IMG/VR virus record: IMGVR_UViG_3300020165_000007
Location: 124,001 to 188,000 of that record
DNA length: 64,000 nucleotides
Reading direction: 5' to 3' (one strand)
The number at the start of each line of letters is the position of its first letter. Position 1 is the stretch's first letter. Below the pieces are notes generated by a model, which saw nothing but the letters and a program-made list of their open reading frames with translations, did not search any database and was not told where the DNA came from. This document shows positions 25,903-52,441 of this stretch, piece after piece. Position numbers and translations under genes: made by a program.

Positions 25903-26214
25903 ATGAAAAGACAATTATTAATAGACGAATATTCATTTAACGATGGAGAATTGAATATAATTTTTCAAGATGGGGATAAAAATTACCGAGAAGATAACAT
26001 AGATGAAGATATTTTCGAATCTTATATTACCGCATCAGGTAGATTAGAAGGGTTTGAAGATATGTGGGATGGGTATAGTGAGTCTCATTATACTAAAGAC
26101 TATATTATGGACTATTCCTACTGGTTAAGTGAAATTTGTGAGAGTAGTGACATTTTAGATTTTATTTACTATTATTACGAAAGTAATAAATTACCTAAAA
26201 TACTTGAAGAATGA
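25903..26214 (+). CDS. Acidic hypothetical protein
   Basis: 103 aa ORF overlapping the rmlC start. Confidence 0.7.
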   Translation: MKRQLLIDEYSFNDGELNIIFQDGDKNYREDNIDEDIFESYITASGRLEGFEDMWDGYSESHYTKDYIMDYSYWLSEICESSDILDFIYYYYESNKLPKILEE

Positions 26215-26852
26215 ATTTAATCTCCACTTCCTTTGATAACGTATATCTTATTGAGGAACCTGTCCATACTGATGATAGGGGTTTTTTTATGGAAACATGG
26301 AATGAAATAGGATACTCTAATAGAAAGTTACTTAAAGATATACCTTCACTAAAAGCGATACAGAATGACGATTCATTATTCTCAACTCTGTTTGTTCAAG
26401 ATAACCTATCTAAATCAAAATTAGGGGTCTTTAGAGGACTACATTATCAAACAGGTGACTTTCCTCAGCCCAAATTAGTTAGAGTATTAAAAGGGTCCGT
26501 AATCGATTTTATAGTTGATTTGAGAGAGGATTCTAAAACCTACGGTAAGTTTGAGTTTTTTGAATTAAATGATAAAAATAATATGAGTTTATTTATTCCC
26601 TCATACTTCGCTCACGGATTTTTATCTTTAGAAGACGATACTCTTCTTTCTTACAAGTGTGGTAGTTATTACAGTAAAGAAAGTGAAGGAAGCGTAAATT
26701 ATAATGACCCAGTCATCAGACATGTAATTAACAATAAAGACACAATTAAAGACGTTATAGAAATTAACTTACCTCATCATAATGAAAAAGATTTACTCAT
26801 ATCTGATAAAGATAAAAACGCACCAAAATTCCTTTATAGAAGGCATGAATGA
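26211..26852 (+). CDS. rmlC: dTDP-4-dehydrorhamnose 3,5-epimerase
   Basis: DDRGFFME, FVQDNLSKS, RGLHYQ, VDLR, FAHGF, YKC and SDKD motifs. Confidence 0.93.
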   Translation: MNLISTSFDNVYLIEEPVHTDDRGFFMETWNEIGYSNRKLLKDIPSLKAIQNDDSLFSTLFVQDNLSKSKLGVFRGLHYQTGDFPQPKLVRVLKGSVIDFIVDLREDSKTYGKFEFFELNDKNNMSLFIPSYFAHGFLSLEDDTLLSYKCGSYYSKESEGSVNYNDPVIRHVINNKDTIKDVIEINLPHHNEKDLLISDKDKNAPKFLYRRHE

Positions 26853-27033: not shown

Positions 27034-27906
27034 TTAGATAAATTTCTTAAATCTATCAAACATTTCTACTATTCGTTCTTTTTGTTTTATAAAGTCTTCC
27101 ATTAGGTCTTCGTCAACATCTTCATATGTCTCACCACATCCTTCACACACATCTTCCTCCTCAACCTCTTCGTATGTTTCACCACATCCTTCACACACAT
27201 CTTCCTCATCAACCTCTTCGTATGTTTCACCATCCATGGAACCGTCTGAATTGAAATTATAAGCCCCCATTTCACCACTATACTTTTCCTTACCGTCTAA
27301 GTCTTGATTCATATCTGAATCAACATCATCATACTCGGCAGCACTCATCTCACCCCCAAACATTTGCATGATGGAATCAATATCCATACCATAAGAATCG
27401 GAAATATCAGTTGTAGAGTCATCAAATTGTTCAGGACCTCCAGATTCAAAGTCGTAAGCTGATTCTACATCTGACACATCCATATCATCAGCCGCGTATT
27501 CTTTAACTTCCTCCTGTAATGATTTACACTTTTCACTATTCATGTTTAAGAATAATTGAGCCTGTTTCTCTGGTTTTCCACCTTCTTTTCGGGCTTTTTC
27601 AACACAGTCACATGTAACTTCACCCCCACAGTATTCAGTAAAACTACCTTTATCCATATCAACTTTCTGAATCCAATCTTTATCTTCTTCACTAACAACA
27701 GATTCGTTAACCAAATGATTTTTGTATTGACCGACCTCACCTCTGTTGTTAACGGTAATACCTTGTGAATCTGATGGACCTTCGTCCTGTAATAATGGTT
27801 GTGGACCTGATGGAATATTACCAGTAGCATATCCGTTGTAGAATGCTGAGTGTTGCTGAAGGATTGAATTTCTCTCTTCGTCTGACATTGTAGAATAACC
27901 TCTCAT
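27034..27906 (-). CDS. Acidic protein with CxxC tandem repeats, possibly head-associated
   Basis: MRGYSTMSDEERNSILQQH; VCEGCGETYEEV repeated; TATTTATA upstream. Confidence 0.7.
   Translation of the reverse strand: MRGYSTMSDEERNSILQQHSAFYNGYATGNIPSGPQPLLQDEGPSDSQGITVNNRGEVGQYKNHLVNESVVSEEDKDWIQKVDMDKGSFTEYCGGEVTCDCVEKARKEGGKPEKQAQLFLNMNSEKCKSLQEEVKEYAADDMDVSDVESAYDFESGGPEQFDDSTTDISDSYGMDIDSIMQMFGGEMSAAEYDDVDSDMNQDLDGKEKYSGEMGAYNFNSDGSMDGETYEEVDEEDVCEGCGETYEEVEEEDVCEGCGETYEDVDEDLMEDFIKQKERIVEMFDRFKKFI
27121..27232. repeat. 48-bp tandem coding repeat, about 2.3 copies
   Basis: Encodes GETYEEV[DE]EEDVCEGC units. Confidence 0.85.
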
Positions 27907-27986
27907 GACTATTTTTTTATATAAATATGTTTTACTTACAGAATAATTTGACATCTTAAATAAAGATTTGTATGTTTAAAACAAAA

Positions 27987-28277: not shown

Positions 28278-28688
28278 ATGACTGTACATGAACTTAGTGA
28301 CTACTTCAACCAATCTCCGAACATGGCAAAAGTTTATAAAGAACATAAGTCCATCGGTCGTTTGATTCGTAGTAATATGTTTAAGTACTCTAATCCTCGT
28401 CGTTGGAATAATAAGGACTTGACTTATAAAATCACGTACATTAAGGTCGACAAGAGTGAAAATTTAATAGTCAATCTCAAAGTCTCAGGTACGATGGGTA
28501 ATAATTGGGGTGGAGAAAAGGGGACTTGTGTTACTGAATATGTTAAAGTTAATTTCTCAAGTTCCCGTAGACGTAATGATGATATTCGTAGGGCGGTTCG
28601 AGAAGATGTTCAAAAGTTTTTCCGTCTTTTCGGTATGGATAGTTATAGGGTTGAGATTGGTAAGATTAAAGTGTGTAAAGAACTTTAA
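28278..28688 (+). CDS. Basic hypothetical protein
   Basis: Promoter TTTG 28226 / TATATTTG 28250. Confidence 0.75.
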   Translation: MTVHELSDYFNQSPNMAKVYKEHKSIGRLIRSNMFKYSNPRRWNNKDLTYKITYIKVDKSENLIVNLKVSGTMGNNWGGEKGTCVTEYVKVNFSSSRRRNDDIRRAVREDVQKFFRLFGMDSYRVEIGKIKVCKEL

Positions 28689-31270
28689 AGTTTTACCGTA
28701 AAATACTTAAAAGCTAACGGACCTAATTTCCTCAATTCTCGGTTAATATTATTAGTAGTTAACTCTTGCTCTTTATCTTGTAGATTTCTAAATGCTACTG
28801 ATATCATAACCTGTTGTGACTTCTCTGCAAGTTGCAACAGGTTTTCTTTTTCATCCTCATCTTCAATTTGTTGGTAACTACCCTGTAATTCTTGTATCTT
28901 TAAATATTTTTCCAAGAAGTCTCTACCGCTCCAAGTAAAATCAGGTGATTGCATCATATTAACAATACCACTATCTCTTAACGCCTTTAAAAAATCAAAG
29001 ATATAACCACCATTATCCATTTTTAGAAGGGGTAGTAATGGTTTCATTTCATCAATAAAATTTTCATTAATTGTTGTAATAGACTCAGGATATGTATCAC
29101 TAATAGTACCCTCATTTTTATCGGGGTAATCTGAATTCTTTAATATATGTCTAAGTAAGTTTAAAGAACCAATTCTTTTGTCGTTAGTATCCACAACAGT
29201 CCAAGGAACCTCACCTTTACCCAAGTCAAAAACTTTTTCTTTGTATTCTGTATAGTCATCCCACTTTTCTAAAGACTTTTCATCATTAGGTGAAAATTTC
29301 CAATATTTTAAAGGCGAAGACTTTCTTAAATCAAATCTTTTTTCTTGTGTTTTAGGTGTTATTGATAACCAAAACTTATATAAGTCAGTTCCCCTACTAA
29401 CTAAAGACTTTTCAAAATCATTAACATTATTCATAAACCCCTCATATTCTTCATCAGTTCCATATCCCATAACTGGTTCCACAATTCCTCTGTTATACCA
29501 ACTACGGTCAAAAAAAGTAATTTTACCAGGTTCAATATGTTGTTCATATCTTTTAAACCAATCCTCCCTTTCTTCAGGTGTTGGTATTCCCAAGGCAACC
29601 ACATTAAAATATTTTGGGTCTAAATATTTAGTTATGGTTCTTATCGTTGAGCCTTTACCTGCAGTGTCTCTACCTTCGAATACTACTGCGATAGATTTAC
29701 CTGTCTGCTTGATGTGTTCTTGTAATTTTAATAACTCAACTTGTAATGGTAGTAACTCTTTTTTAAATTGTTTTTTACCTATGGAAGATATCTCAGGCTC
29801 CTCGCCTCCGTAAACTAACTCATCTTCAACATTAAAATCATCATCTTCAAATTCTGACGATTTTCTATTACCGATAGAATTAACTAAGATTTCTAAATAT
29901 TCTCTGGCGTTTATTCTTGGGTTACCTGATTTTAAAAATTTTCTTTCTAAGTTTCTTATTACTAAGTTGTTTATATCCTCATCTTTTAGTTGAGATAGTA
30001 AATCTTCCATTTCTGACGGGTCAATATCTTTACTTCTTAATACGTTAGATAAATCTTCTTTAGATTCATCCATTTGACTGGGAAGGTCTATCAATCCTTT
30101 ATCTTTCATTATTCTCGCCAGTCTATCTCCATATAAATCAATAACTCTTTTTAAGAATAAATCAGGATTTTTTCTAATATATTGAATTATATCAAACCTG
30201 ACATTTTTAGAGTATTTTCCAAATAAGTCTGATATTTTGTCGTCTTTTCTATACGAGTCTTTACGATAAAACAGGTTTTTTATTTCTTTATTACTGACCT
30301 TAGGAAACGTAATAATTTTACAATCACCTCCAACCTTACCCTGTGGTAATGAAATACTATTTACACTTTTCCCACTTTTATAATTATTAATAACTAAATC
30401 AATTAAACTATCGGTGTCATTTAAACAATATGAAATATATTCATCATTTAAAATAGAAAAAATCCATTTTAGTGACTTTTCTTCACCGGACACCGCACTC
30501 TTCCCCTCTGTTTCTCCTACAACGAAAGATACTTTCATCATTAGTTTTTTATATGGATTAAACTCATCATCTTTATCCATTAAATCTATAGGTCTTTTTA
30601 AATCATCTATTTCATACCCATCCTCAACCATTTTAATTTTTGCGGCCTTAAACCCACTAGATAATGAACCTAAGTCAAATCGTTCACCTGGTTGTGTCAA
30701 TTTAACTGAGTAATAATCCTCACCGATTTTTATATCTTCTTTTCGTTGAGATATTATAGGTTTACCTCCTGTAAGTCCTGCTAATAACCCTTCAAAATTA
30801 AATCCTCTACCGTCTTTATCTTTTTTAAATGATAAGAAGTACTCATAAAATCTAATTTTATCAACTAATCTTTTTAATGTGTTTTCTAAATCAATATCTT
30901 TATTAATGTCAAAAAATGTTAGTCCTTCACTACTTAAAATCTTTTTTATCACATTACTTGAAGACATCTTTGTTTTTGGTATCGGACCTAACGTAGACAT
31001 TATTTTACTTAGAGTTGTTGATGTCGCGTCTATTTCTTCTTTAATTACATCTTGATTTTCTTTAACCCACACATCTTCATCACCAACTAAATTAAGGGTT
31101 CTACCGTTATCCCACTCAACATAATATAATGGTTCATTGCTCCATGGGTCAGACCCAATACCAATAACAGTACCTTTAGTGCCGACAGTTATTGGGGAGT
31201 AAGGGTCACTCATAACAATTAAAGTGACTCTATCACCTTTTTTTAAATTTGGGTTAATATCCATACTCAT
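28685..31270 (-). CDS. ppk2: Multidomain protein: DUF4314-like, putative PD-(D/E)xK nuclease, polyphosphate kinase 2, C-terminal domain
   Basis: QVELLKLQ, FEGRDTAGKG, FDRSWYNR and WKFSPND PPK2 motifs; N-terminal GDRV...DPY...GTKGTV...VEWDNG. Confidence 0.85.
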   Translation of the reverse strand: MSMDINPNLKKGDRVTLIVMSDPYSPITVGTKGTVIGIGSDPWSNEPLYYVEWDNGRTLNLVGDEDVWVKENQDVIKEEIDATSTTLSKIMSTLGPIPKTKMSSSNVIKKILSSEGLTFFDINKDIDLENTLKRLVDKIRFYEYFLSFKKDKDGRGFNFEGLLAGLTGGKPIISQRKEDIKIGEDYYSVKLTQPGERFDLGSLSSGFKAAKIKMVEDGYEIDDLKRPIDLMDKDDEFNPYKKLMMKVSFVVGETEGKSAVSGEEKSLKWIFSILNDEYISYCLNDTDSLIDLVINNYKSGKSVNSISLPQGKVGGDCKIITFPKVSNKEIKNLFYRKDSYRKDDKISDLFGKYSKNVRFDIIQYIRKNPDLFLKRVIDLYGDRLARIMKDKGLIDLPSQMDESKEDLSNVLRSKDIDPSEMEDLLSQLKDEDINNLVIRNLERKFLKSGNPRINAREYLEILVNSIGNRKSSEFEDDDFNVEDELVYGGEEPEISSIGKKQFKKELLPLQVELLKLQEHIKQTGKSIAVVFEGRDTAGKGSTIRTITKYLDPKYFNVVALGIPTPEEREDWFKRYEQHIEPGKITFFDRSWYNRGIVEPVMGYGTDEEYEGFMNNVNDFEKSLVSRGTDLYKFWLSITPKTQEKRFDLRKSSPLKYWKFSPNDEKSLEKWDDYTEYKEKVFDLGKGEVPWTVVDTNDKRIGSLNLLRHILKNSDYPDKNEGTISDTYPESITTINENFIDEMKPLLPLLKMDNGGYIFDFLKALRDSGIVNMMQSPDFTWSGRDFLEKYLKIQELQGSYQQIEDEDEKENLLQLAEKSQQVMISVAFRNLQDKEQELTTNNINRELRKLGPLAFKYFTVKL

Positions 31271-31333
31271 AAAAAATACCTTTTATCATAAATATACTAA
31301 ATAACCTAATATTTATATTTATAATATAAAGTT

Positions 31334-31972
31334 ATGAAGGTAATTTTAACTGAAAGTCAATTTAACACGTTATTAAAAGAGAATTACAAGGAGAAGGTCG
31401 GAGGTTCTCTAATGAATCTTAGTAAATTCTCAAATAAAGTAGTCAGAGACGCGTCAAACCAACTAAAATTTGATTTTAGATTTTTAGTCACTTATGGTGC
31501 AGGTATAGGCTCTATACTACAATCGGTATTTGATTATTTAGAAGGTAACTTTACAGGTCTGAGTGAAACTCAGTTAGCGGGATTGGCTGTTATGGCGGTA
31601 GGGGTTGTGTTTTTTGAAAATAAAGATTTAAAGTCTCAAATAAAAAATATTGAGTCGATGGGTTTAAGTTCTGAATTAGATAACGTTGTTAGTTATACTC
31701 AAAATTTAAAAAATAAATTTTCTAATATTTTAAGGGTTTTAGGTTTGTCTATTCACAGAACATCAAATATTATATCATATAGTTTTTTAATACCATTACT
31801 CTCTATTATTATAGAAATTGTAACATTACATGGTGTTGAATCTTCCCAATTTAGTATGTTAATTGAGAGTTTATTAACATCGGGTCTTATTGCCGTAGAG
31901 GGTGTAGCGTTAAGAGATATATTAATGAAGGCTGGTGATATTATTAGTCAAAAGACTGTTAATCAAAAGTAA
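31334..31972 (+). CDS. Hydrophobic protein with xxLTESQ leader
   Basis: MKVILTESQFNTLLKE; several hydrophobic helices; TATTTATA upstream. Confidence 0.7.
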   Translation: MKVILTESQFNTLLKENYKEKVGGSLMNLSKFSNKVVRDASNQLKFDFRFLVTYGAGIGSILQSVFDYLEGNFTGLSETQLAGLAVMAVGVVFFENKDLKSQIKNIESMGLSSELDNVVSYTQNLKNKFSNILRVLGLSIHRTSNIISYSFLIPLLSIIIEIVTLHGVESSQFSMLIESLLTSGLIAVEGVALRDILMKAGDIISQKTVNQK

Positions 31973-32291: not shown

Positions 32292-32666
32292 TCATAATTC
32301 AAAATCTTTTTTTAATTGTTCAATATCCATTCTAAGTTTTTCATCTCTTTCAATAGAATCTGTAGCACTTTCAAAGTCTACGTCTTTTTTGTTTTTAGAT
32401 GAATAATCAGTATCGGTAGAATATGCTTTATTATGTGAACCTCCCGAATCTAACCCCTTTTCTAATCTAATTAATCTTTTATGTATTTCCTTAATAGAAT
32501 TTTCTACATCTGACCAATTTTCAATACTTTGTAAAATTATAGTATCTGATAAAAATTCAGGTAAATCATAATCAACAACGTCTGATGTATTCCCGTAAAG
32601 ACCTTGTTCTTTAATAGTCTGTATAATTACTTTATTTAGTTGGGTTTCTGTTAACTTAATTTTCAT
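32292..32666 (-). CDS. Hypothetical protein with xxLTETQL leader
   Basis: MKIKLTETQLNKVIIQTIKEQ. Confidence 0.7.
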   Translation of the reverse strand: MKIKLTETQLNKVIIQTIKEQGLYGNTSDVVDYDLPEFLSDTIILQSIENWSDVENSIKEIHKRLIRLEKGLDSGGSHNKAYSTDTDYSSKNKKDVDFESATDSIERDEKLRMDIEQLKKDFEL

Positions 32667-33505
32667 CTTACTTTATATTTTTCTTTGTACTTATTAGTTA
32701 AAAAAAGTACTAGTTCATTAATATCTTCGTTATTTAGATTATGAACATTTTTATTTCTATTAAACCAATCCCTCATTGTTTTTTCTATCGGTTCTTTTCT
32801 AAGTTTGTTTACTCTTCTAAAACCTTTTAACTCTGCGGGTATTTCATGTGGCTGTTTATAATACTCTTTATCTTTAGGTCTATCATCTGAATTATCCTCA
32901 AAAGGGTCTTTTTCATCATCTGGACTTCCCCATGAGGTTTGATAAACGTGTTCTAATTCGTGCGCAATTATATCATTTAAATCCGCAATTACATCATATA
33001 AAATTTTAGGTAAACCATTAGGGTTAATTATAAGATTAATTGTTATTGTATCACCCTCATCAACTGTCTGACCATCAATTAAGTAACCGTCTTTTAGGTT
33101 AGGGTCTAACTGATATGTAAATTCTACACTAAACTCAGGTATGTTTTTAAAGTCATACTCAAATTCTTCCCCGTCTGTTATTTTTTCAGGTAAGTAATGA
33201 TTTCCTGTTTCTTTACTTTTAATAATATTAACTAATGTCCTAACAATTTCTCTTATAGGTGCGTCTGTAACTCTTCTTTCAACTACTAACCCTTCTATCA
33301 GTATCTTACCCCTTTCTTTCAAGTGTTCTTTAATTTGAAACACTAATTCTTCGACTATAGTATTTGGATTTTCGTCTTCATAAAATCCTGTTTTGATTCT
33401 GAAGTAGTTTTTACTCACTAAGGACTCTGCATAAGGAATGTTATTTGTCTTAACGACAACCATTTCCATTATACCATCATAATAATCTTTAAATTCTTCA
33501 CTCAT
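32663..33505 (-). CDS. HExxH metallopeptidase-like protein
   Basis: IAHELEHVYQ...YYKQPHEIPA; start MSEEFKD. Confidence 0.65.
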   Translation of the reverse strand: MSEEFKDYYDGIMEMVVVKTNNIPYAESLVSKNYFRIKTGFYEDENPNTIVEELVFQIKEHLKERGKILIEGLVVERRVTDAPIREIVRTLVNIIKSKETGNHYLPEKITDGEEFEYDFKNIPEFSVEFTYQLDPNLKDGYLIDGQTVDEGDTITINLIINPNGLPKILYDVIADLNDIIAHELEHVYQTSWGSPDDEKDPFEDNSDDRPKDKEYYKQPHEIPAELKGFRRVNKLRKEPIEKTMRDWFNRNKNVHNLNNEDINELVLFLTNKYKEKYKVR

Positions 33506-33989
33506 TATCCTCAAATATAATATCATTAATTTTTAATTCATAGTCTTCCATACCAATTAATCTTGCAAGTCTACCAAATTGACTATCCCAATTATAACTA
33601 CTACTTTTAAATTGTTTTTTAAAAAAATCAAATAAATCTCCAAGTTTTGAGTCCACAACTAGTGTATTAATATCAGTATCACCTAATATGACGTTTTTTA
33701 ATACAATATCGCAACTTAACGACTTATAAATTTTACCCATACTATTTATCACTGAAAACTTTTTAGGTATAAATTTAATTTCACATTTTATTTTCGTTGG
33801 TGTAGAAAATAAAAAAATCTCATCCTCCATATGTCTAAAGGTAGATAGTAGGTGTAACCTATCTTTAAAATTAACAGAATCTTTTTTTAACTCTTCAATA
33901 GTTTCATCCCTGTTTTGTATTACGTCTTTAGCGTAATAATCATCAGGTCGGTTATAAAGATAGTCGGGTAATTCAATGTCTAATTCCAT
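33498..33989 (-). CDS. Hypothetical protein
   Basis: 163 aa ORF with ATATTTAT upstream. Confidence 0.7.
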   Translation of the reverse strand: MELDIELPDYLYNRPDDYYAKDVIQNRDETIEELKKDSVNFKDRLHLLSTFRHMEDEIFLFSTPTKIKCEIKFIPKKFSVINSMGKIYKSLSCDIVLKNVILGDTDINTLVVDSKLGDLFDFFKKQFKSSSYNWDSQFGRLARLIGMEDYELKINDIIFEDNE

Positions 33990-34001
33990 AACAAATAAAT
34001 A

Positions 34002-34847
34002 TTACAAACTTTGTAACATTTCAATAAGTTTTGGATGTGGGTAAATATCAAACTTATCTTTTCTAAAATTAGTGTGTGACCATATCCCCGAACCACCCTC
34101 ATTCGCTAATGGTTGGTAGTCAAAAGGTTTCCAATTGTTTCTTTTAGCATCTGTATATAACCTTAACGCATAATTAGTATTTCTACCATGTAATCCGTCT
34201 TCGAGTAGCATTTTACCATTCATACCTAAGTACCCCTTACTATTTAAAAATTTCTGTTGTTTAAGTATAGGTAAATCCTTTATTGTATCATCATAAGATT
34301 CAAATAATTCATTAATGCCCTTACACACGTCAATATTATATTTTTCAGATAAAGTAGATATCAAATACTTAATAGACGAGATTTGTTTATCTGTATAGTT
34401 GTGATAATATCTAAATCCTCTCCAATTTTTACCTAAATCAATTACATCTTCATCAGGTACTTTAGAATTGACATATGTGAAATATTGACCGTCTTGAGAC
34501 CTCGTTAGAGGTCCGTAATTACATATTTCAATACCTATTGATTGTTTATTTAACTGTGAGTTGTTTGAATTTTTAGTCCCTAAGTGATGTGCCCAATATT
34601 TTAAATCAAAACACTCCACAATATTACCGTCCCACTTAGTGTCTCCATCTCTAGTTGATTTATTTCCTATTACAAAATGAGTCGCAACCCTTAAAGATTT
34701 ACCTCCTTTAGTTTTATCTCTATCCCACGCATACACAACCCAATCAGGTCTATGACTACCAGCAGTATGATGTAGTACTATAGATTTCTTTTCCGTTTCA
34801 TCCGGAAAAAATTCATCTTTTGGAAGGTGTAATTTATTTATCTTCAT
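34002..34847 (-). CDS. N-acetylmuramoyl-L-alanine amidase (endolysin-like) with PG-binding-like insert
   Basis: IVLHHTAG, WAHH, SIGIEI, WSH...KFDIYP; insert QKFLN..GY...EDGLHGRNT. Confidence 0.85.
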   Translation of the reverse strand: MKINKLHLPKDEFFPDETEKKSIVLHHTAGSHRPDWVVYAWDRDKTKGGKSLRVATHFVIGNKSTRDGDTKWDGNIVECFDLKYWAHHLGTKNSNNSQLNKQSIGIEICNYGPLTRSQDGQYFTYVNSKVPDEDVIDLGKNWRGFRYYHNYTDKQISSIKYLISTLSEKYNIDVCKGINELFESYDDTIKDLPILKQQKFLNSKGYLGMNGKMLLEDGLHGRNTNYALRLYTDAKRNNWKPFDYQPLANEGGSGIWSHTNFRKDKFDIYPHPKLIEMLQSL

Positions 34848-34883
34848 AATAATATTATTAGATTTGTCTTATATAATATAAAT

Positions 34884-35471
34884 ATGAAAAAAATAACTTT
34901 ATTATTTAACTTATTACTTTCATTTACCACATTATGGTCTCAAAATGAAAAAAATATTGTTACGGATATTTTTATTGTAAAATATTCTGAAACTTTAGAG
35001 CAACCTACATTTATTTTTTATGAGGTAAAGTGCCCTAACGGTAATCAATCAAGAAGTGGTCTAAACTTTAAAAAATATGAAGGAGTACATACCTCGGATA
35101 ATGACGATTACGTAGATAATATATGGGATAAAGGTCACTTAGCACCCGCAGCCGCATTTAACTGTGATTTAGAAACCTTAAAAAAAACATTTTCTTTTTT
35201 AAATTGTGCGTTACAGCATCAGTCGTTAAATAGGGGTCCTTGGAGAGAGTTAGAAGAGTTTGAGCGTAACTTATCTAAAATTTTCGATAAAGTTTTTGTT
35301 GAAATAACTTGTCATTTTAGTGAAAATTCGTTAGTATTACCAACTGGAGCAACAGTTCCTGACGGATTTAGTAAAAATATAACATTTAATAATACCATTG
35401 AATGTTTTTATTTTCCTAATTCAGATGTGTCAGGAATTGATTGGTCAGAATTTAGAATAACTAATAAATAA
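34884..35471 (+). CDS. Secreted DNA/RNA non-specific endonuclease (NucA/EndA type)
   Basis: Signal peptide; [27 protein letters not shown]. Confidence 0.85.
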
Positions 35472-35493: not shown

Positions 35494-37374
35494 ATGGGAA
35501 AAGTTATTGGAATCGATTTGGGTACAACTAATTCATGTGTTTCTGTAGTTGAAGCGGGTACTCCTATCGTAATAGTCAATTCTGAAGGTAGAAGAACAAC
35601 ACCTTCAATAGTTTCATTTAAAGATGGTGACCGCATTGTTGGAGATGCAGCAAAACGTCAATCTATTACAAATCCAGAGAATACAATATACTCTGTTAAA
35701 CGTTTTATCGGTAGTACCTATTCAGAGGTTTCGAAAGAAGTTAAAAAAATGCCATATAAAATATCTAAAGGTGACGGTGGAAAAGTCATAATAAATGTTA
35801 ATGATAGAGATTATGTACCACAAGAAATTTCGGCAATTGTTTTACAAAATTTGAAAAAAACTGCTGAAGATTATTTAGGAGAAAAAGTAACACAAGCCGT
35901 TATTACGGTACCTGCATATTTTAACGATTCACAAAGAAACGCAACAAAAGAAGCGGGTGAAATTGCTGGTCTTGAGGTACTTAGAATAATTAACGAACCT
36001 ACTGCAGCTGCACTATCTTACGGTTTAGATAAAGAAGGAGATAAAAAAGTTGCAGTATATGACTTAGGTGGTGGTACTTTTGACATATCTATTTTAGATA
36101 TGGGTGATGGGGTATTTGAAGTTTTATCCACTAACGGAGACACTCATTTAGGTGGAGATAACTTTGACGAGGTTTTAATTGATTGGATGATAAATAAATT
36201 TAAAGAGGAGTCGGGTATTGACGTATCTAAGGATTCTATGGCGATACAGAGACTTCGTGACGCATCTGAGAAATCTAAAATCGAATTATCATCGTCAAGT
36301 TCAACAGAGATTAATTTACCTTATCTCTCTGCAGGTTCAGAAGGTCCAAAACATTTTGTATGTAAATTAACTAGGTCTGAATTTGAAAGGATGGTAGAGG
36401 ATTTAGTAAAGAAGACCATTTCTCCTTGTCGTAAGGCGGTAAAATCGGCAAATCTAAAAGTAGATGATATTGATGAAGTAATTTTAGTAGGAGGTTCAAC
36501 AAGAATGCCATGTATACAAAATGCCGTTGAAAAGTTCTTTAAGAAGACCCCATCTAAAGGAGTTAACCCTGATGAGGTAGTCGCTATGGGTGCGTCTATA
36601 CAGGGTGGGGTACTTGCTGGTGATGTTAATGACGTTCTTTTATTGGATGTAACTCCTTTATCTTTAGGTATTGAAACAATGGGTGGTATTATGACAAGGT
36701 TAATCGAATCTAACACGACAATACCCACATCAAAATCTCAGGTATTTTCAACGGCGGTAGATAATCAACCCGCTGTTGATATTCATGTATTACAAGGTGA
36801 AAGACCTTTATCTTCAGACAATAGAACGTTAGGTAGATTCCAATTAACAGATTTACCCCCATCACCAAGAGGGATACCTCAAATAGAAGTGACGTTTGAT
36901 ATTGACGCCAACGGTATTATAAATGTAAGTGCAAAAGACAAGGCTACTGATAAGGTGCAAAATATACGTATAGAATCAGGAAATGGTTTGTCAGATGAAG
37001 AAATTGAAAGAATGAAGAAAGACTCTTTAAAGAATGAGGAGTCTGATAATAAAAAGAAATCTGAGATTGAAAAATTAAATGAGGTAGACTCTATGATTTT
37101 TCAAACCGAAAAACAGATAAAAGAATTCGGGGATAAATTAAGTGACACAGACAAAGACAATTTAAATAATAGTTTAAGTAAATTAAAATCCTCATATGAG
37201 GAAAAAGATTTTAATTCTATTGACGAGGATTTAAATTTGTTAAATGAAACATGGTCATCAATATCAACAAAATTATACGAAAATAATCAAGAAGATGATT
37301 CTAATCAATCAGATTCTTTAGATGACGATATAGATGTAAATGATGTGGAATTTGAAGAAGTAAAAACACATTAA
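35494..37374 (+). CDS. dnaK: Hsp70 chaperone DnaK
   Basis: [32 protein letters not shown] and DVEFEEV motifs. Confidence 0.97.
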
Positions 37375-39841: not shown

Positions 39842-39924
39842 GGAGGGATGCCAGAGTGGTTAATGGAGCAGTTTGCTAAACTGTCGTCGGTAACGACGCG
39901 TGGGTTCGAATCCCACTCCCTCCG
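39842..39924 (+). tRNA. tRNA-Ser(GCT)
   Basis: GGAGGGA/TCCCTCC acceptor, loop TTGCTAA, long variable arm, TTCGAAT T-loop. Confidence 0.93.
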
Positions 39925-40097
39925 CAAAAATTAAAAAATGAACTTTAAATATAACATATCAAACAATACAGAACATTTTGAATACACGGTGTATTTGACT
40001 GAAGAAGAATTCAAATCAATTAATTTCGAAAATTACTCAACTACATTTGGTTAAATGAATAATAAGTCATATATTTGTAGAACAAAACAAATAAACA

Positions 40098-40352
40098 ATG
40101 TCAAAAGAAAAACTGTATCGTAGTTCAAATGGTGACTACCTTTACTTGTTCAACTGGAAATGTGGTGGGTTCAATGACGTGTGGGCACCCAATAAGCGTG
40201 AAGCTTATAAGCGTGTAATGAAGGAGCGTAAGGAGTCGGAGGAAAAATACCCTAATCATTCTAAACTTCGTCCTGACTATGATTCAATGCGTCGTTGCAC
40301 TTATAGTGAATATCAGGAACAAAATAAAATGGGTTGGCTACTATCAATCTAA
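40098..40352 (+). CDS. Small hypothetical protein
   Basis: Promoter TTTG 40046 / TATATTTG 40070. Confidence 0.75.
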   Translation: MSKEKLYRSSNGDYLYLFNWKCGGFNDVWAPNKREAYKRVMKERKESEEKYPNHSKLRPDYDSMRRCTYSEYQEQNKMGWLLSI

Positions 40353-40358
40353 TTATAT

Positions 40359-40432
40359 GACTTCGTAGCTCAGTTGGTTAGAGCATCTCACTTTTAATGA
40401 GAGGGTCCTGGGTTCGAGTCCCAGCGGGGTTA
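40359..40432 (+). tRNA. tRNA-Lys(TTT)
   Basis: Cloverleaf; TCTCA-CTTTTAA-TGAGA. Confidence 0.92.
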
Positions 40433-40521
40433 CTTCATCTACCTAAAATTATATCAACATGAAATATTAGCAATAACAAACAAATCAGCTTAATTTAAAA
40501 TTTATAACTAATGTAAACAAA

Positions 40522-40712
40522 GACATTCTCTGAGTAGGGTAAGAATAAAGGAGAGTGTTATAACAAAACTTCTTGCGTGAGTTGGTAAGGTAGCAGCGCA
40601 AGTCTTGTCAGACGCTTACCAAGTCATGGACGAGTGGTGTAAGAAGGTTCCGTTCAAGTTAATGAGAGCGGGTAGACCCAAACAATGGTGGAGTACCAAT
40701 CAAAATCTCCAC
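40522..40712 (+). ncRNA. Candidate structured ncRNA between tRNA-Lys and tRNA-Leu
   Basis: GC-richer spacer with nested helices and no listed ORF. Confidence 0.45.
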
Positions 40713-40718
40713 TGAAAT

Positions 40719-40800
40719 ACCGATGTGGCGTAATTGGTAGCCGCGACAGTCTTAGGAACTGTTGTCGAAAGACGTGTAGGTTCGAGTCCTATCATCGGTA
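40719..40800 (+). tRNA. tRNA-Leu(TAG)
   Basis: ACAGT-CTTAGGA-ACTGT with variable arm. Confidence 0.92.
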
Positions 40801-40807
40801 CTTATAT

Positions 40808-40882
40808 GGTGACTATAGTTCAGTTGGTTAGAACGTCTGATTGTGGTTCAGAAGGTCGTCGGTTCGACTCCGATTAGTCACC
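40808..40882 (+). tRNA. tRNA-His(GTG)
   Basis: Encoded G-1, C73 and loop TTGTGGT. Confidence 0.93.
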
Positions 40883-40890
40883 CATTATAA

Positions 40891-40960
40891 GGTCAGATGT
40901 CCGATTGGAAGGTGTAGGTACGCAATACCTATAACGGTGGTTCGAATCCATCTCTGACCT
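40891..40960 (+). tRNA. tRNA-Cys(GCA) with atypical anticodon loop
   Basis: GGTCAGA/TCTGACC acceptor, U73, TAGGT-ACGCAAT-ACCTA. Confidence 0.82.
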
Positions 40961-40984
40961 CAATTTGAATGAAAACTGTAAATT

Positions 40985-41263
40985 ATGTATGACCCAAAAC
41001 AAGACCCTGCCTTTACAAATAACCCTTATCTAACAGATTATGAATTTAATTATGATTTAATGATGGACCCATGTAGTAACCCAAATCCACCTTCATGGTG
41101 TGAAGACGGTACTGGAGGTCCTTGTAATAACCCTGACCACGGACCTTATTGTGATGGTGTTCACGCAGTACCATGTGATGGTGGAATTATGATGTTATTT
41201 CTTTCTGCAATATTTGGGGTATCATTAATCAAAAAAAGATTTGTTTTATCGAGATACATGTAG
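40985..41263 (+). CDS. Small Cys/Pro-rich protein with PID-CTERM-like sorting tail
   Basis: C-terminal VPCDGG, hydrophobic helix, then KKR. Confidence 0.6.
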   Translation: MYDPKQDPAFTNNPYLTDYEFNYDLMMDPCSNPNPPSWCEDGTGGPCNNPDHGPYCDGVHAVPCDGGIMMLFLSAIFGVSLIKKRFVLSRYM

Positions 41264-41290
41264 TATATTTGTATTCGTTATTTAACATAT

Positions 41291-41364
41291 GCACCCCTAG
41301 CTCAGTTGGATAGAGCATCTGCCTTCTAAGCAGACGGTCACAGGTTCGAATCCTGTGGGGTGTA
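41291..41364 (+). tRNA. tRNA-Arg(TCT)
   Basis: TCTGC-CTTCTAA-GCAGA; own promoter at 41240-41271. Confidence 0.93.
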
Positions 41365-41431
41365 CAAAAAATCTACAATAGATTTGGTAGTTCAAAAAAG
41401 TTACTTATCTTTGTAGTGTTCTTTACAGAAT

Positions 41432-41517
41432 GCCCGGATGGTGGAAGTGGTAGACACGACAGACTTAAAATCTGTTTCGCCGAACGGTGAGTGTGGGTTC
41501 GAGTCCCACTCCGGGTA
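41432..41517 (+). tRNA. tRNA-Leu(TAA)
   Basis: ACAGA-CTTAAAA-TCTGT; promoter at 41383-41413. Confidence 0.93.
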
Positions 41518-41606
41518 CTAAGATAAAGTTCTTTGATATGATGGTATAGTAAATAAGTAAAACTTTCGCTGATGACCCCTCTGCGACAAAAAAGGGGAAC
41601 CAATAC

Positions 41607-41680
41607 GGGGACGTAGCTCAATTGGTTAGAGCATCAAGCTTATATCTTGAAGGTCGGAGGTTCGATTCCTCTCGTCCCTA
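41607..41680 (+). tRNA. tRNA-Ile(TAT)
   Basis: TCAAG-CTTATAT-CTTGA, A73, intact D and T arms. Confidence 0.85.
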
Positions 41681-41698
41681 CTAAAACTATAATAAAAT

Positions 41699-42121
41699 GG
41701 GGGGTCGTCTCTTCGTCCTGATGTGTGGCGACCTCCCGATATAACAAATCGCGTGTGAGGTGAATATGGGGCTTCGGCCCCTACCTCACACACAACAAGC
41801 CGTGTAGTCGTGAAAGGAGTGGTGACTGGAAGCGACCTGAGTACTAGAAAACTCAGACCTGTGTGAAAGCAATCTGTGGGTTGGATGCGCCGACTAAGTA
41901 GTATCTTTTGATACCTTACCCTTATTCTAGTTTGGGTGTCGTTCGGAGAGTAGTGGGTTCGAATCCCATCACATTGGCTAAATTTAAATCACTAAACCCT
42001 CCTACTGACAAGGAGGGGAGGTAAAGATGAACGGGGTATGTCAGAATCCTCAGTAATCGGTGTAACGGTTCGAATCCGTCAGGGGTATTGTCCTTGTAAC
42101 TATCGGAGTATACACCACCTC
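41699..42121 (+). ncRNA. Candidate large structured ncRNA (or two to three adjacent RNAs) with two T-loop hairpins
   Basis: Many helices, a UUCG tetraloop, two GGTTCGAATCC arms without a tRNA cloverleaf, and a kissing-loop complement. Confidence 0.65.
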
Positions 42122-42125
42122 AATT

Positions 42126-42201
42126 GCCACTATAGCTTAGTTGGTAGAGCAGCTGATTTGTAATCAGCAGGTCGGCGGTTCGAGTCCGTCTAGTGGCTCC
42201 A
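42126..42201 (+). tRNA. tRNA-Thr(TGT)
   Basis: GCTGA-TTTGTAA-TCAGC; CCA encoded. Confidence 0.94.
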
Positions 42202-42212
42202 TATAAAAAAGA

Positions 42213-42292
42213 GGGGGTATCGCATAGTGGCAATTGCGGCTGACTGTAAATCAGCTCCTTCGGGTTCGGAGGTTCGAGTCCTTCTACCCCCA
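42213..42292 (+). tRNA. tRNA-Tyr(GTA)
   Basis: GCTGA-CTGTAAA-TCAGC with variable arm. Confidence 0.93.
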
Positions 42293-42295
42293 CAT

Positions 42296-42369
42296 TCTCC
42301 CTTAGCTCAGTTGGTTAGAGCATCTGACTGTTAATCAGAGGGTCCTTGGTTCGAGCCCAAGAGGGAGAG
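42296..42369 (+). tRNA. tRNA-Asn(GTT)
   Basis: TCTGA-CTGTTAA-TCAGA, G73. Confidence 0.93.
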
Positions 42370-42448
42370 CGGCGCCTGAAGACTGAGAGAAGGGGAGTGA
42401 CTATTAATTTAGTCCTCCTCTTTTTGTATTTATAAATAAAATAATAAA

Positions 42449-51294: not shown

Positions 51295-51368
51295 GCGCCC
51301 ATAGCTCAGTTGGTTAGAGCATCCGACTCATAATCGGCAGGTCCTAGGTTCAAGTCCTAGTGGGCGCA
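51295..51368 (+). tRNA. tRNA with CAT anticodon (likely Ile2/lysidine type; elongator Met possible)
   Basis: CCGA-CTCATAA-TCGG; C4-G69 and C5-G68 pairs; no initiator features. Confidence 0.85.
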
Positions 51369-51381
51369 CAAACACATTACG

Positions 51382-52335: not shown

Positions 52336-52420
52336 GGAGAGATGGCAGAGCGGTCGAATGCGACGGTCTTGAAAACCGTTGTACCGAAAGGTACCGGGGG
52401 TTCGAATCCCTCTCTCTCCA
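52336..52420 (+). tRNA. tRNA-Ser(TGA)
   Basis: ACGGT-CTTGAAA-ACCGT; GTACC-GAAA-GGTAC variable arm. Confidence 0.93.
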
Positions 52421-52441
52421 CATAATTTAAAAATTAAAAAA

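What the first reader, a model, noticed from the sequence alone, without database searches (positions are those of the whole stretch)
28685..31270. PPK2 embedded in a four-module polyprotein-like ORF
Seen: a DUF4314-like N-terminus; a segment GFNFEGLLAGLTGG...EDIK...YSVKL resembling a PD-(D/E)xK nuclease; an intact PPK2; and a C-terminal FLKALRDSGIVNM domain. Modules are separated by VIKEE, MDES and TINEN linkers resembling the proposed cleavage sites, and ATATTTAT lies upstream. Established: PPK2 makes NTPs from polyphosphate. Inference: a virion-loaded polyprotein cut into separate enzymes, delivering an NTP-regenerating kinase at infection, perhaps countering nucleotide-depletion defences or starved hosts.
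Basis: partly seen in the sequence, partly recalled or inferred. Interest (0 to 1): 0.65.

Follow-up and report, generated by a model that had tools for sequence, protein, structure and literature searches.

The report
Phage PPK2–nuclease fusion with swappable modules
A marine T4-like jumbo phage encodes one long protein that strings a nuclease-fold module and an intact polyphosphate-driven nucleotide kinase between two small conserved end domains; related phages swap, lose or replace the inner modules at junctions that look like cutting sites of the phage's own head protease.

Summary
The 861-aa ORF (window 28685-31270, minus strand) is real, and independent assemblies bridge it. DUF4314 has a Pfam match. 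Residues 76-399 fold confidently (pLDDT 93) into a PD-(D/E)xK nuclease-like core with a conserved E160...D179...S188-x-K190 site. The PPK2 is subclass I with every catalytic residue intact. The C-terminal ~125-aa domain is strongly conserved but of unknown fold. ATATTTAT is a genuine recurrent upstream box, shared with the portal and prohead-protease genes. New here: the gene is one allele of a series at a fixed locus. The minimal form is DUF4314 plus the C-terminal domain (203-206 aa). Other alleles insert PPK2, an unrelated second cassette, or another module, with at least five state changes among 39 close relatives. Every junction keeps a hydrophobic-x-Glu tripeptide. The genome encodes a T4 gp21-type protease, and free-standing relatives of the nuclease module carry short leaders ending in the same motif. 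Cleavage and virion loading are therefore plausible but unproven: the fusion itself has no N-terminal leader and there are no proteomic data. It is a new variant of phage multidomain or internal proteins, of moderate to high interest.

The parts
28685..31270 (-). Whole 861-aa ORF (P0001), stop codon included
   Evidence: bridged by independent contigs; 41 related clusters
31288..31295 (-). ATATTTAT promoter-like box, 25 nt upstream of the ATG (class RTATTTAT)
   Evidence: the same box precedes the portal and prohead protease genes
31055..31270 (-). N-terminal frame domain, DUF4314 (residues 1-72; Pfam match 10-67), SH3-like
   Evidence: no paralogue elsewhere in the genome
31037..31045 (-). 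Junction 1, I76-K77-E78 | E79
   Evidence: [LI]xE in 36 of 38 relatives across two unrelated cassette types; matches the tail of the MNLKIIIRE|EID leader of free-standing relatives
30074..31045 (-). Cassette type A (residues 76-399): N-terminal helices, PD-(D/E)xK-like core (about 118-325) and a C-terminal helical subdomain
   Evidence: AF2 pLDDT 93; Foldseek and VIA-align hits almost all restriction endonucleases or resolvases; family of 154 representatives, mostly free-standing
30701..30793 (-). Putative nuclease active-site residues E160 (30791-30793), D179 (30734-30736), S188 (30707-30709), K190 (30701-30703)
   Evidence: E160 60/60, D179 59/60, K190 59/60, S188 52/60 in the 60-member alignment; positions in helix and hairpin of the model; coordinates
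30065..30073 (-). Junction 2, M400-D401-E402 | S403
   Evidence: hydrophobic-x-E-[SNT]-K in all relatives, including those without a cassette; coordinates
29783..30064 (-). Conserved acidic, probably helical linker (residues 403-496) that always travels with PPK2
   Evidence: conservation 0.6-0.9; present in the 536-aa forms and in P0062; no family match
29105..29782 (-). PPK2 module, subclass I (residues 497-722): Walker A D535/K539, Walker B D588-R589-S590, N593, lid R645/R649/K655
   Evidence: PMC4748334, PMC11641546
29063..29071 (-). Junction 3, I734-N735-E736 | N737
   Evidence: invariant in 41 of 41 relatives, including P0037 and the minimal 203-aa forms
28688..29062 (-). C-terminal frame domain (residues 737-861), fold unknown
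   Evidence: 87% mean column identity; retained with any cargo and in minimal alleles; no Pfam, PDB or Atlas match
31334..31972 (+). Divergent syntenic neighbour (212 aa) with leader MKVILTE|S and its own RTATTTAT boxes at 31309-31316 and 31315-31322
   Evidence: conserved beside every allele

Best explanation
Shown:
- This is a multi-module protein of a marine T4-like jumbo phage, carrying the late-type upstream box.
- A two-domain frame (N-terminal DUF4314 plus a conserved C-terminal domain) exists on its own as a 203-206-aa protein in sister phages.
- In this allele the frame carries two cargo modules in its inter-domain linker. One is a PD-(D/E)xK nuclease-fold cassette. The other is a catalytically intact subclass I PPK2, a polyphosphate-driven NDP-to-NTP kinase.
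- The cargo turns over: cassettes are swapped for an unrelated one, lost, or PPK2 is replaced.
- Every module boundary carries hydrophobic-x-Glu.

Inferred:
- These tripeptides are cleavage sites for the phage's gp21-type (S77) prohead protease.
- The protein would therefore be taken into the prohead and cut into separate polypeptides (DUF4314, nuclease, linker-PPK2, C-terminal domain).
- The pieces would be delivered with the DNA, as T4 does with Alt and its internal proteins.
- The nuclease would attack host or competitor DNA. PPK2 would turn host polyphosphate plus ADP/GDP into ATP/GTP at the start of infection.
For: Modules:
- Pfam DUF4314 and PPK2.
- PPK2 catalytic residues and the subclass I Asn are intact (PMC4748334, PMC11641546).
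- Nuclease fold: pLDDT 93. Foldseek top hits are PvuII, ThaI, DpnI, NhoI and HincII. 25 of the top 26 VIA-align chains are PD-(D/E)xK nucleases, Z 3.7-7.5. E160, D179 and K190 are conserved in 59-60 of 60 members.

Allelic series at one syntenic slot. At least 5 cassette-state changes on the tree of 39 relatives. Cassettes A and B are unrelated (hhalign probability 0.1%).

Junction tripeptides are conserved in 36/38, all, and 41/41 rows.

Protease: an S77 protease and a Gp23-type capsid protein are in the genome. T4 gp21 removes 10-20-aa targeting leaders and cuts Alt at ITE-6 and LTE-619 (PMC5694885). T-even internal proteins are hypervariable behind a conserved leader (PMC3012670).

Leaders: free-standing type A relatives and many ORFs of this phage begin with short leaders ending in [LI/F]xE. 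P0062 is leader + cassette A + PPK2. The cassettes keep the leader tail even when it is internal, which fits a position-independent cleavage site.

Expression: the RTATTTAT box is shared with the portal and protease genes and enriched on leader-bearing ORFs (OR 2.7-3.6, p 0.002-0.007).
Against: - There is no proteomic or biochemical evidence of cleavage or packaging.
- The fusion's own N-terminus is the start of DUF4314, not a T4-like 10-20-aa leader.
- In other phages DUF4314 is a small free-standing protein beside methyltransferases, not a known targeting domain.
- [LI]xE is common: 1.3 per 100 aa in this proteome. P0001 has 8, against 12.5 +/- 3.1 in shuffles, which is not a significant depletion.
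- Neighbours are accessory genes (amidase, sugar epimerase, nuclease, Hsp70), about 37 kb from the head module.
- A few dozen injected kinase molecules with kcat of a few per second (PMC4748334) would add little to a cell's NTP pool.
- Nuclease Z-scores are middling (7.5 or less), and Ser replaces the acidic residue of (D/E)xK.
- That RTATTTAT marks late transcription is inferred only from which genes it precedes.
Confidence: 0.4

Rival explanations
1. An unprocessed cytoplasmic bifunctional enzyme. The nuclease-fold module and PPK2 would act together inside the infected cell as a nucleotide-salvage unit. Nucleic acid is degraded, and the resulting nucleotides (after NMP kinases) are recharged to NTPs from host polyphosphate. 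The two frame domains would provide oligomerisation or localisation, and the junction tripeptides would be linker or helix-cap preferences.
For: The cassette A-linker-PPK2 arrangement recurs in a more distant protein with different ends (P0062), which suggests functional coupling. PPK2 is intact and subclass I. The neighbourhood consists of metabolic and accessory genes. Abundant expression makes more metabolic sense than a few injected copies (kcat values in PMC4748334). The fusion has no N-terminal leader.
Against: PPK2 also occurs in the frame without any cassette or with the unrelated cassette B, and cassette A occurs without PPK2 (P0133, P0052, P0037). The pairing is therefore not obligatory. 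This model does not explain why hydrophobic-x-Glu is kept at every junction across unrelated cassettes, or why the cassettes retain leader tails.
Confidence: 0.33
2. A hot spot for selfish nuclease genes. Cassettes A and B would be mobile, homing-endonuclease-like or restriction-like genes that landed in frame in a permissive linker of a DUF4314-PPK2 gene. They would have no functional link to PPK2, and the conserved junction tripeptides would serve mainly as short direct repeats that allow in-frame gain and loss.
For: Type A is mostly a free-standing gene family with patchy distribution. Structural neighbours include the homing endonuclease I-Ssp6803I and many restriction enzymes. Two unrelated cassettes use one site. 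Loss and replacement recur among near-identical backbones. The cassette-less alleles read as a clean junction-to-junction deletion.
Against: No intein or Hint signature was found, and the cassette ends lack the Cys/Ser start and His-Asn end that I recall as typical of inteins (own knowledge). The reading frame is kept in all of about 40 clusters, so the fused product is under selection. PPK2 itself and the module of P0037 behave as cargo in the same frame. DNA-level repeats at the junctions could not be examined because no DNA was available.
Confidence: 0.15
3. An assembly or gene-calling artefact that joins separate genes.
For: One relative (L009) is called as four abutting ORFs.
Against: L009 is collinear with P0001 across three frame changes on a contig of 4x coverage, which points to sequencing indels. 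41 clusters from ENA, JGI, NCBI and Logan carry the fusion. Contigs of independent studies bridge all junctions without indels.
Confidence: 0.01

Closest known systems
T4 internal proteins and Alt (capsid-targeted, gp21-processed ejection proteins)
   Same: The phage has a T4-type capsid and an S77 protease. The cargo is hypervariable behind conserved short motifs. [LI]xE motifs resemble ITE-6 and LTE-619 of Alt (PMC5694885). An enzyme as head cargo has a precedent (Alt), and internal proteins are diverse apart from their leader (PMC3012670).
   Different: Here several modules are concatenated in one ORF, with the motif at internal junctions. The N-terminus is a folded 70-aa DUF4314 domain rather than a 10-20-aa leader. 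Packaging is not shown.
Polyvalent proteins of phages and conjugative elements (Iyer et al. 2017, PMC5512222)
   Same: Both are multi-domain proteins combining nucleic-acid-targeting and metabolic activities. They are proposed to be delivered at invasion and processed into separate units.
   Different: None of the hallmark domains (MPTase peptidase, DarB-type helicase/methylase, LPD domains) was detected. Neither PPK2 nor DUF4314 is found in the main text of that survey. Processing here would be by the prohead protease, not an in-built peptidase.
Subclass I PPK2 (Francisella FtPPK2, PDB 5LL0/4YEG; Sinorhizobium SMc02148, PDB 3CZQ)
   Same: E about 1e-63 to FtPPK2. Walker A, Walker B and lid residues are identical, and the subclass I Asn is present (PMC4748334, PMC11641546).
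   Different: It is embedded between other modules and preceded by a conserved ~95-aa acidic linker. Identity to any cellular PPK2 found is 48% or less. It scores below NCBIfam's equivalog cut-off (270 against 301.8 bits). Substrate range is untested.
Type II restriction endonucleases of the PD-(D/E)xK fold (MspI, HinP1I, PvuII, NhoI)
   Same: Same core fold by two independent aligners. The helix Glu, the strand Asp and the x-K strand are conserved. From my own knowledge, MspI and HinP1I also have a non-acidic residue at the first position of the (D/E)xK element.
   Different: There is no sequence-level family membership. The module has extra N-terminal helices and a C-terminal helical subdomain that also occurs alone. 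It has no methyltransferase partner and occurs in phages, mostly as a leader-bearing free-standing protein.
PPK2 genes of other phages (huge phages LR756502 and LR745206, Moraxella phage Mcat6, Acinetobacter phage MD-2021a)
   Same: They carry PPK2 at 38-53% identity. Viral ppk is listed as an auxiliary metabolic gene type in surveys (PMC12106651).
   Different: In those records only the PPK2 part matches. None shows the DUF4314 / cassette / C-terminal architecture.

Membership tests
PPK2 (Pfam PF03976), subclass I | Profile match above the curated cut-off | tested here: met
   235.8 bits against a cut-off of 22.3, residues 499-719. Below the NCBIfam equivalog cut-off for TIGR03707 (270.5 against 301.8).
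PPK2 (Pfam PF03976), subclass I | Walker A (DxxGK), Walker B (DRSxY) and lid R-x3-R plus Lys | tested here: met
   D535/K539, D588-R589-S590, and R645/R649/K655 align to FtPPK2 D62/K66, D117/R118, and R174/R178/K184 (PMC4748334).
PPK2 (Pfam PF03976), subclass I | Subclass residue after Walker B: Asn = I, Gly = II, Glu = III | tested here: met
   N593 in RSWY-N (rule from PMC11641546).
PPK2 (Pfam PF03976), subclass I | PolyP-dependent NDP phosphorylation, with no NMP activity | not testable with these tools
   Needs an enzyme assay.
PD-(D/E)xK nuclease superfamily | Alpha/beta core fold (helix, then a beta-hairpin carrying the motifs) | tested here: met
   Model pLDDT 93. 25 of the top 26 VIA-align chains are PD-(D/E)xK enzymes, Z 3.7-7.5, with 97-162 residues aligned. 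Foldseek top hits are the same enzymes, though with E of 0.011 or more.
PD-(D/E)xK nuclease superfamily | Catalytic D ... (D/E)-x-K, with a helix Glu | tested here: inconclusive
   E160, D179 and K190 are conserved in 59-60 of 60 members, but the first position of (D/E)xK is Ser in 52 of 60. Such variants exist in active enzymes (own knowledge), so activity is open.
PD-(D/E)xK nuclease superfamily | Sequence-profile membership of a described nuclease family | tested here: not met
   No Pfam, PHROG or NCBIfam match to the module. No PDB profile match.
DUF4314 (Pfam PF14192) | Profile match above the cut-off | tested here: met
   41.3 bits against 27. The genome-level search gives 44.4 bits.
T4-type capsid-targeted, gp21-processed head proteins | gp21-type (S77) prohead protease in the same genome | tested here: met
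   PF03420 at 81 bits; phrog_207 head maturation protease, E 2e-43.
T4-type capsid-targeted, gp21-processed head proteins | Short (10-20 aa) N-terminal targeting leader ending in [LI]xE | tested here: not met
   P0001 starts directly with DUF4314. Such leaders are present on free-standing type A relatives, on P0062 and on neighbouring ORFs.
T4-type capsid-targeted, gp21-processed head proteins | [LI]xE-type sites at the processed boundaries | tested here: met
   IKE, MDE and INE sit at the three boundaries and are conserved in 36/38, all (as hydrophobic-x-E) and 41/41 rows. A motif being present does not show cleavage.
T4-type capsid-targeted, gp21-processed head proteins | Presence of processed fragments in virions | not testable with these tools
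   No cultured relative was found, and there are no proteomic data.
Polyvalent proteins (PMC5512222) | Hallmark domains (MPTase, DarB-like helicase/methylase, LPDs, ArdC and others) | tested here: not met
   Pfam finds only DUF4314 and PPK2. The paper's main text has no hit for PPK2 or DUF4314.
Inteins / in-frame homing elements | Hint splicing domain; Cys/Ser at the start and His-Asn at the end of the insert | tested here: not met
   No Hint family match. The cassette starts at I76 and ends ...PSQMDE.

The most novel reading that the evidence does not exclude
The DUF4314 + C-terminal-domain frame is a cargo-loading device of a lineage of marine T4-like jumbo phages. One folded N-terminal domain would take a whole string of enzymes into the prohead. 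The S77 protease would cut them apart at hydrophobic-x-Glu junctions. The phage would then inject a changeable kit (restriction-like nuclease, polyphosphate-driven NTP generator, other modules) that is reshuffled between close relatives. This would be the first T4-type ejection polyprotein and the first virion-delivered energy 'jump-starter'.
Probability: 0.3. Interest if true: 0.8.

Novelty: new variant of a known kind. Interest (0 to 1): 0.6.

Why it matters
I found no study of phage PPK2: the PPK2 review does not mention viruses, and viral ppk appears only in survey lists. Here an intact subclass I PPK2 sits in a protein whose inner modules turn over between near-identical phages, which suggests conflict with the host or adaptation to it. 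If the junctions are protease sites, T4-like phages would have a polyprotein route for loading several enzymes into the capsid with a single targeting element, including an enzyme that taps host polyphosphate for ATP and GTP. That would matter for infection of starved marine cells and for engineering T4-type capsids as protein carriers. Independently of that question, the work defines a new family of about 320-aa phage nuclease-fold proteins (154 cluster representatives) and a set of recurrent N-terminal leaders that can be tested as capsid-targeting signals.

Tried and rejected
- **First fold of residues 72-400.** A mixed 29-sequence alignment gave pLDDT 43 and was not used. The cause was two unrelated cassette types in one alignment.
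- **ESM Atlas look-alikes.** Nothing for the C-terminal module. For the middle module there were only unnamed viral clusters, plus restriction enzymes at 0.81-0.82.
- **PDB profile searches.** Cassette A, cassette B and the C-terminal module gave no significant match. A weak AnkX/Fic-motif match (E 0.2) was rejected because the catalytic His is absent and the fold is not Fic-like.
- **Complex prediction on DUF4314 and the C-terminal domain.** No verdict (score 0.00, controls not run). This is neither for nor against binding.
- **Apparent split gene in L009.** It reflects three frame changes on a 4x contig, not separate genes.
- **DNA of the cassette-less allele and its B-type sister.** It could not be fetched, so junction microhomology was not examined.
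- **IMG/VR scan with the C-terminal profile.** Only five close loci were found.
- **Cellular donor of the PPK2.** Not resolved: 48% identity or less, from mixed phyla.
- **Pfam and PHROG on neighbours.** These included an HExxH-containing ORF and the substitute module of P0037. Nothing useful came back.
- **Literature searches.** No papers were found for DUF4314 or for phage-encoded PPK2.
- **Not tested.** The nuclease-like motif of cassette B (GN.VE ... GFVD.FG.DMV ... PVQVS...K) remains an untested lead.
Full report
**Setting.** The window is bases 124001-188000 of a 270,383-bp IMG/VR virus record that CheckV rates 88% complete. It is about 32% G+C and carries 12 tRNA genes, a ClpB-like ATPase, an Hsp70 and a protein with a CHU_C type IX secretion sorting domain. 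The genome encodes a Gp23-family major head protein, a Peptidase_S77 (T4 gp21-type) prohead protease, a portal and a large terminase in T4 order at 112-122 kb. So it is a T4-like jumbo phage. The exact gene sequence occurs in marine, seawater and estuary metagenomes of at least nine studies. A Bacteroidota host is suggested only indirectly. The hints are the CHU_C domain, a PorP_SprF gene in a relative, and TAnnTTTG boxes upstream of 30 genes, which resemble the Bacteroidota -7 promoter element (own knowledge).

**Observation.** The ORF at 28685-31270 (minus strand) encodes 861 residues. Pfam finds DUF4314 at 10-67 and PPK2 at 499-719, and NCBIfam and PDB searches agree on PPK2. Residue-by-residue alignment to Francisella PPK2 shows that Walker A (D535, K539), Walker B (D588-R589-S590) and the lid residues (R645, R649, K655) are all identical to the residues described for that enzyme (PMC4748334). 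The residue after Walker B is Asn593, the subclass I signature (PMC11641546). By homology the module is therefore an intact polyphosphate:NDP phosphotransferase. Activity itself is not shown.

**The fusion is real.** A word search found 41 related protein clusters from ENA, JGI, NCBI and Logan, most of them 820-880 aa with both Pfam domains. Contigs from two DNA studies and from two RNA-library runs bridge all three module junctions without indels. One relative that is called as four abutting ORFs is collinear with P0001 through three frame changes on a contig of 4x coverage. I read that as sequencing error.

**Middle module.** Conservation splits the protein into three zones: a conserved N-terminus (1-70), a fast-evolving middle (80-400) and a highly conserved rest. 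The middle falls into two groups, A (this window) and B, with no detectable homology (BLAST components; hhalign probability 0.1%).

- An exhaustive HMMER search with the type A profile found 154 cluster representatives, 76 of them at E of 1e-10 or better. Most are free-standing proteins of about 290-370 aa. Some free-standing copies sit in unrelated phage contexts.
- With a 60-member alignment the module folds at pLDDT 93 and pTM 0.87.
- Foldseek gives no hit at E of 0.001 or better, but its list is headed by PvuII, ThaI, DpnI, NhoI/Eco15I and HincII.
- The Foldseek-independent search puts PD-(D/E)xK enzymes in 25 of its first 26 rows. Examples are NhoI Z 7.5, MspI 7.3, PvuII 6.7, HinP1I 6.3, I-Ssp6803I 5.5 and Hjc 5.0.
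- The Z-scores are middling, so the case rests on the consistency of the hits and on the active-site columns. E160 (60/60) lies in a helix, D179 (59/60) at the start of a strand, and S188-x-K190 (52/60 and 59/60) in the next strand.

Catalytic competence is open, because Ser replaces the acidic residue.

**Allelic series.** BLAST mapping and further searches show the following forms:

| Form | Example proteins | Size |
|---|---|---|
| DUF4314 + C-terminal domain only | P0198, P0203-P0206 | 203-206 aa |
| Frame + linker + PPK2 | P0031, P0033, P0039 | 536 aa |
| Frame + cassette A + linker + PPK2 | this window | 850-880 aa |
| Frame + cassette B + linker + PPK2 | P0014 and others | 822-843 aa |
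| Frame + A + an unrelated 197-aa module replacing PPK2 | P0037 | 741 aa |
| Frame + A | P0133 | 661 aa |
| DUF4314 + A | P0052 | 426 aa |
| MKIKLTE|S leader + A + linker + PPK2 + a different C-terminus (more distant) | P0062 | 748 aa |

The minimal, 536-aa and B-type forms are complete genes in the same syntenic slot as the window's gene: a SAP-domain gene, a divergent 212-aa gene, this gene, then convergent small genes. On a tree of the conserved 402-861 block, type A arises at least twice and the cassette-less state three times. At least five changes are needed among 39 closely related rows. Neither frame domain has a paralogue elsewhere in the genome.

**Junctions.**
- J1 is I76-K77-E78. 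[LI]xE stands at these columns in 36 of 38 relatives, in both unrelated cassette types, amid variable flanks.
- J2 is M400-D401-E402|S403. Every relative has hydrophobic-x-E-[SNT]-K there, including the cassette-less forms.
- J3 is I734-N735-E736|N737. It is invariant, and it is also the only junction in the minimal alleles.

[LI]xE is not rare. P0001 has 8 such sites, shuffles give 12.5 +/- 3.1, and the proteome has 1.3 per 100 aa. The argument is therefore about placement and conservation, not enrichment.

**Leaders.** Free-standing type A proteins begin with short leaders ahead of the first fold motif, either M[KR]Y[IL]xx[FY]xxFE[SN] or MGKIIITEQQ / MKIKITESQ / MNLKxIIREEID. J1 of P0001 (VIKE|EID) matches the tail of the last type. 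Many ORFs of this phage carry similar leaders, such as MKIIKLTE, MKKIIKLKES, MKELIRKILRE and MGKRIILSE. They include an 84-aa lysine-rich ORF next to the capsid gene and the two nearest neighbours of the PPK2 gene. In T4, gp21 removes 10-20-aa capsid-targeting leaders from internal proteins and cuts Alt at ITE-6 and LTE-619 (PMC5694885). T-even internal proteins are highly diverse apart from that leader (PMC3012670). The resemblance is a lead, not a test.

**Upstream box.** ATATTTAT lies at 31288-31295 on the gene's strand, 25 nt before the ATG. It precedes 40 of 246 genes against 2.4 expected. The wider form RTATTTAT precedes 57 genes at two preferred distances. Those genes include the portal, the prohead protease and the scaffold-position gene, whereas TAnnTTTG precedes ClpB and the Hsp70 operon. 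Leader-bearing ORFs are enriched for RTATTTAT (odds ratio 2.7-3.6, p 0.002-0.007), and none of 21 strict-leader ORFs has TAnnTTTG. That this box marks late genes is inferred from the genes it precedes. RNA-library contigs cover the gene but not the intergenic 31232-31325. This fits real transcripts without proving them.

**Interpretation.** The following are shown: the four modules, the intact subclass I PPK2, the nuclease-like fold with conserved site, the frame-plus-cargo allelic series with repeated turnover, the conserved junction tripeptides, the presence of an S77 protease, and the shared upstream box.

The rest is inferred. I take the junctions to be protease sites, so that the protein enters the prohead, is cut into separate polypeptides and is delivered at infection. 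I give this 0.4.

Arguments for it:
- Unrelated cassettes keep a leader tail even when it is internal. That fits a position-independent cleavage signal better than an N-terminal signal or a structural accident.
- T4 offers direct precedents.

Arguments against it:
- The fusion lacks an N-terminal leader.
- DUF4314 elsewhere is a small free-standing protein beside methyltransferases.
- The neighbourhood is not structural.
- The motif is common.
- A small number of injected kinase molecules would contribute little NTP (kcat values in PMC4748334).

The main rival (0.33) is an uncleaved cytoplasmic nuclease-kinase salvage enzyme. A further view (0.15) sees the cassettes as selfish nuclease genes in a permissive linker, which is partly compatible with either of the other two. 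An artefact is excluded for practical purposes.

**Comparison and novelty.** The protein works most like T4 Alt and the internal proteins, or like the polyvalent proteins of Iyer et al. (PMC5512222). It fails defining features of both: it has no N-terminal leader, and no hallmark polyvalent domains were detected. PPK2 occurs in other phages, but there only the PPK2 part matches. I found no paper on phage PPK2 or on DUF4314. I rate the finding a new variant of a known kind, with interest 0.6.

**Limits.** Cassette B, the 403-496 linker and the C-terminal domain have no fold assignment. The complex prediction for the two frame domains gave no verdict. Junction DNA of sister alleles could not be compared.

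Noticed in passing
window 39842-42370, 51295-51369, 52336-52421: A tRNA array of ten genes (Ser, Lys, Leu x2, His, Arg, Ile-tat, Thr, Tyr, Asn), plus tRNA-Met and a second tRNA-Ser further on.
   Followed up: no
window 4523-6544 and 35494-37374; L007:100-1038: The phage encodes a ClpB-like double AAA+ protein and a full Hsp70/DnaK. A phage contig carrying a free-standing type A gene also has a DnaJ. Both chaperone genes carry the host-like TAnnTTTG box (for Hsp70, at the head of its operon) rather than RTATTTAT.
   Followed up: partly
window 13649-16645: A 998-aa protein with a C-terminal CHU_C type IX secretion sorting domain, which hints at a Bacteroidota host. A relative's contig has a PorP_SprF gene.
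   Followed up: no
whole genome G000; for example window 31334, 32666, 63756; G000:C1:110015-110269, 184811-185487, 187064-194660, 211524-213148: Many ORFs start with a few recurrent leader types: MKIIKLTE, MKKIIKLKES, MKELIRKILRE, MG[KR]xI[IL]LSE and M..[IL][IL][KN]E[IV].RM. One carrier is an 84-aa lysine-rich ORF beside the capsid gene. These ORFs are enriched for the RTATTTAT box. They are candidate capsid-targeting or propeptide signals.
   Followed up: partly
window 32663-33526: A syntenic 287-aa neighbour contains an HExxH motif (AHELEHV). It has no Pfam or PHROG match. It may be an unrecognised metallopeptidase, which would be of interest if the fusion is processed the way polyvalent proteins are.
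   Followed up: partly
window 27034-27954: A 306-aa very acidic protein with tandem CEGCGETYE[ED]V repeats. Only sub-threshold zinc-ribbon-like Pfam hits were found.
   Followed up: no
P0037 residues 412-608 (relative, not in the window): In one allele PPK2 and its linker are replaced by a 197-aa module with a hydrophobic stretch and no family match. It is a third kind of cargo in the same frame.
   Followed up: partly
type A profile positions ~250-310 (P0001 ~325-385; window ~30116-30296): The C-terminal helical subdomain of cassette A also occurs on its own in dozens of small proteins of 76-230 aa.
   Followed up: no
window 26211-26852 and 34002-35471: Accessory genes flank the locus: a dTDP-4-dehydrorhamnose 3,5-epimerase-like gene, an Amidase_2 endolysin-like gene and a PHROG 'nuclease'.
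   Followed up: no
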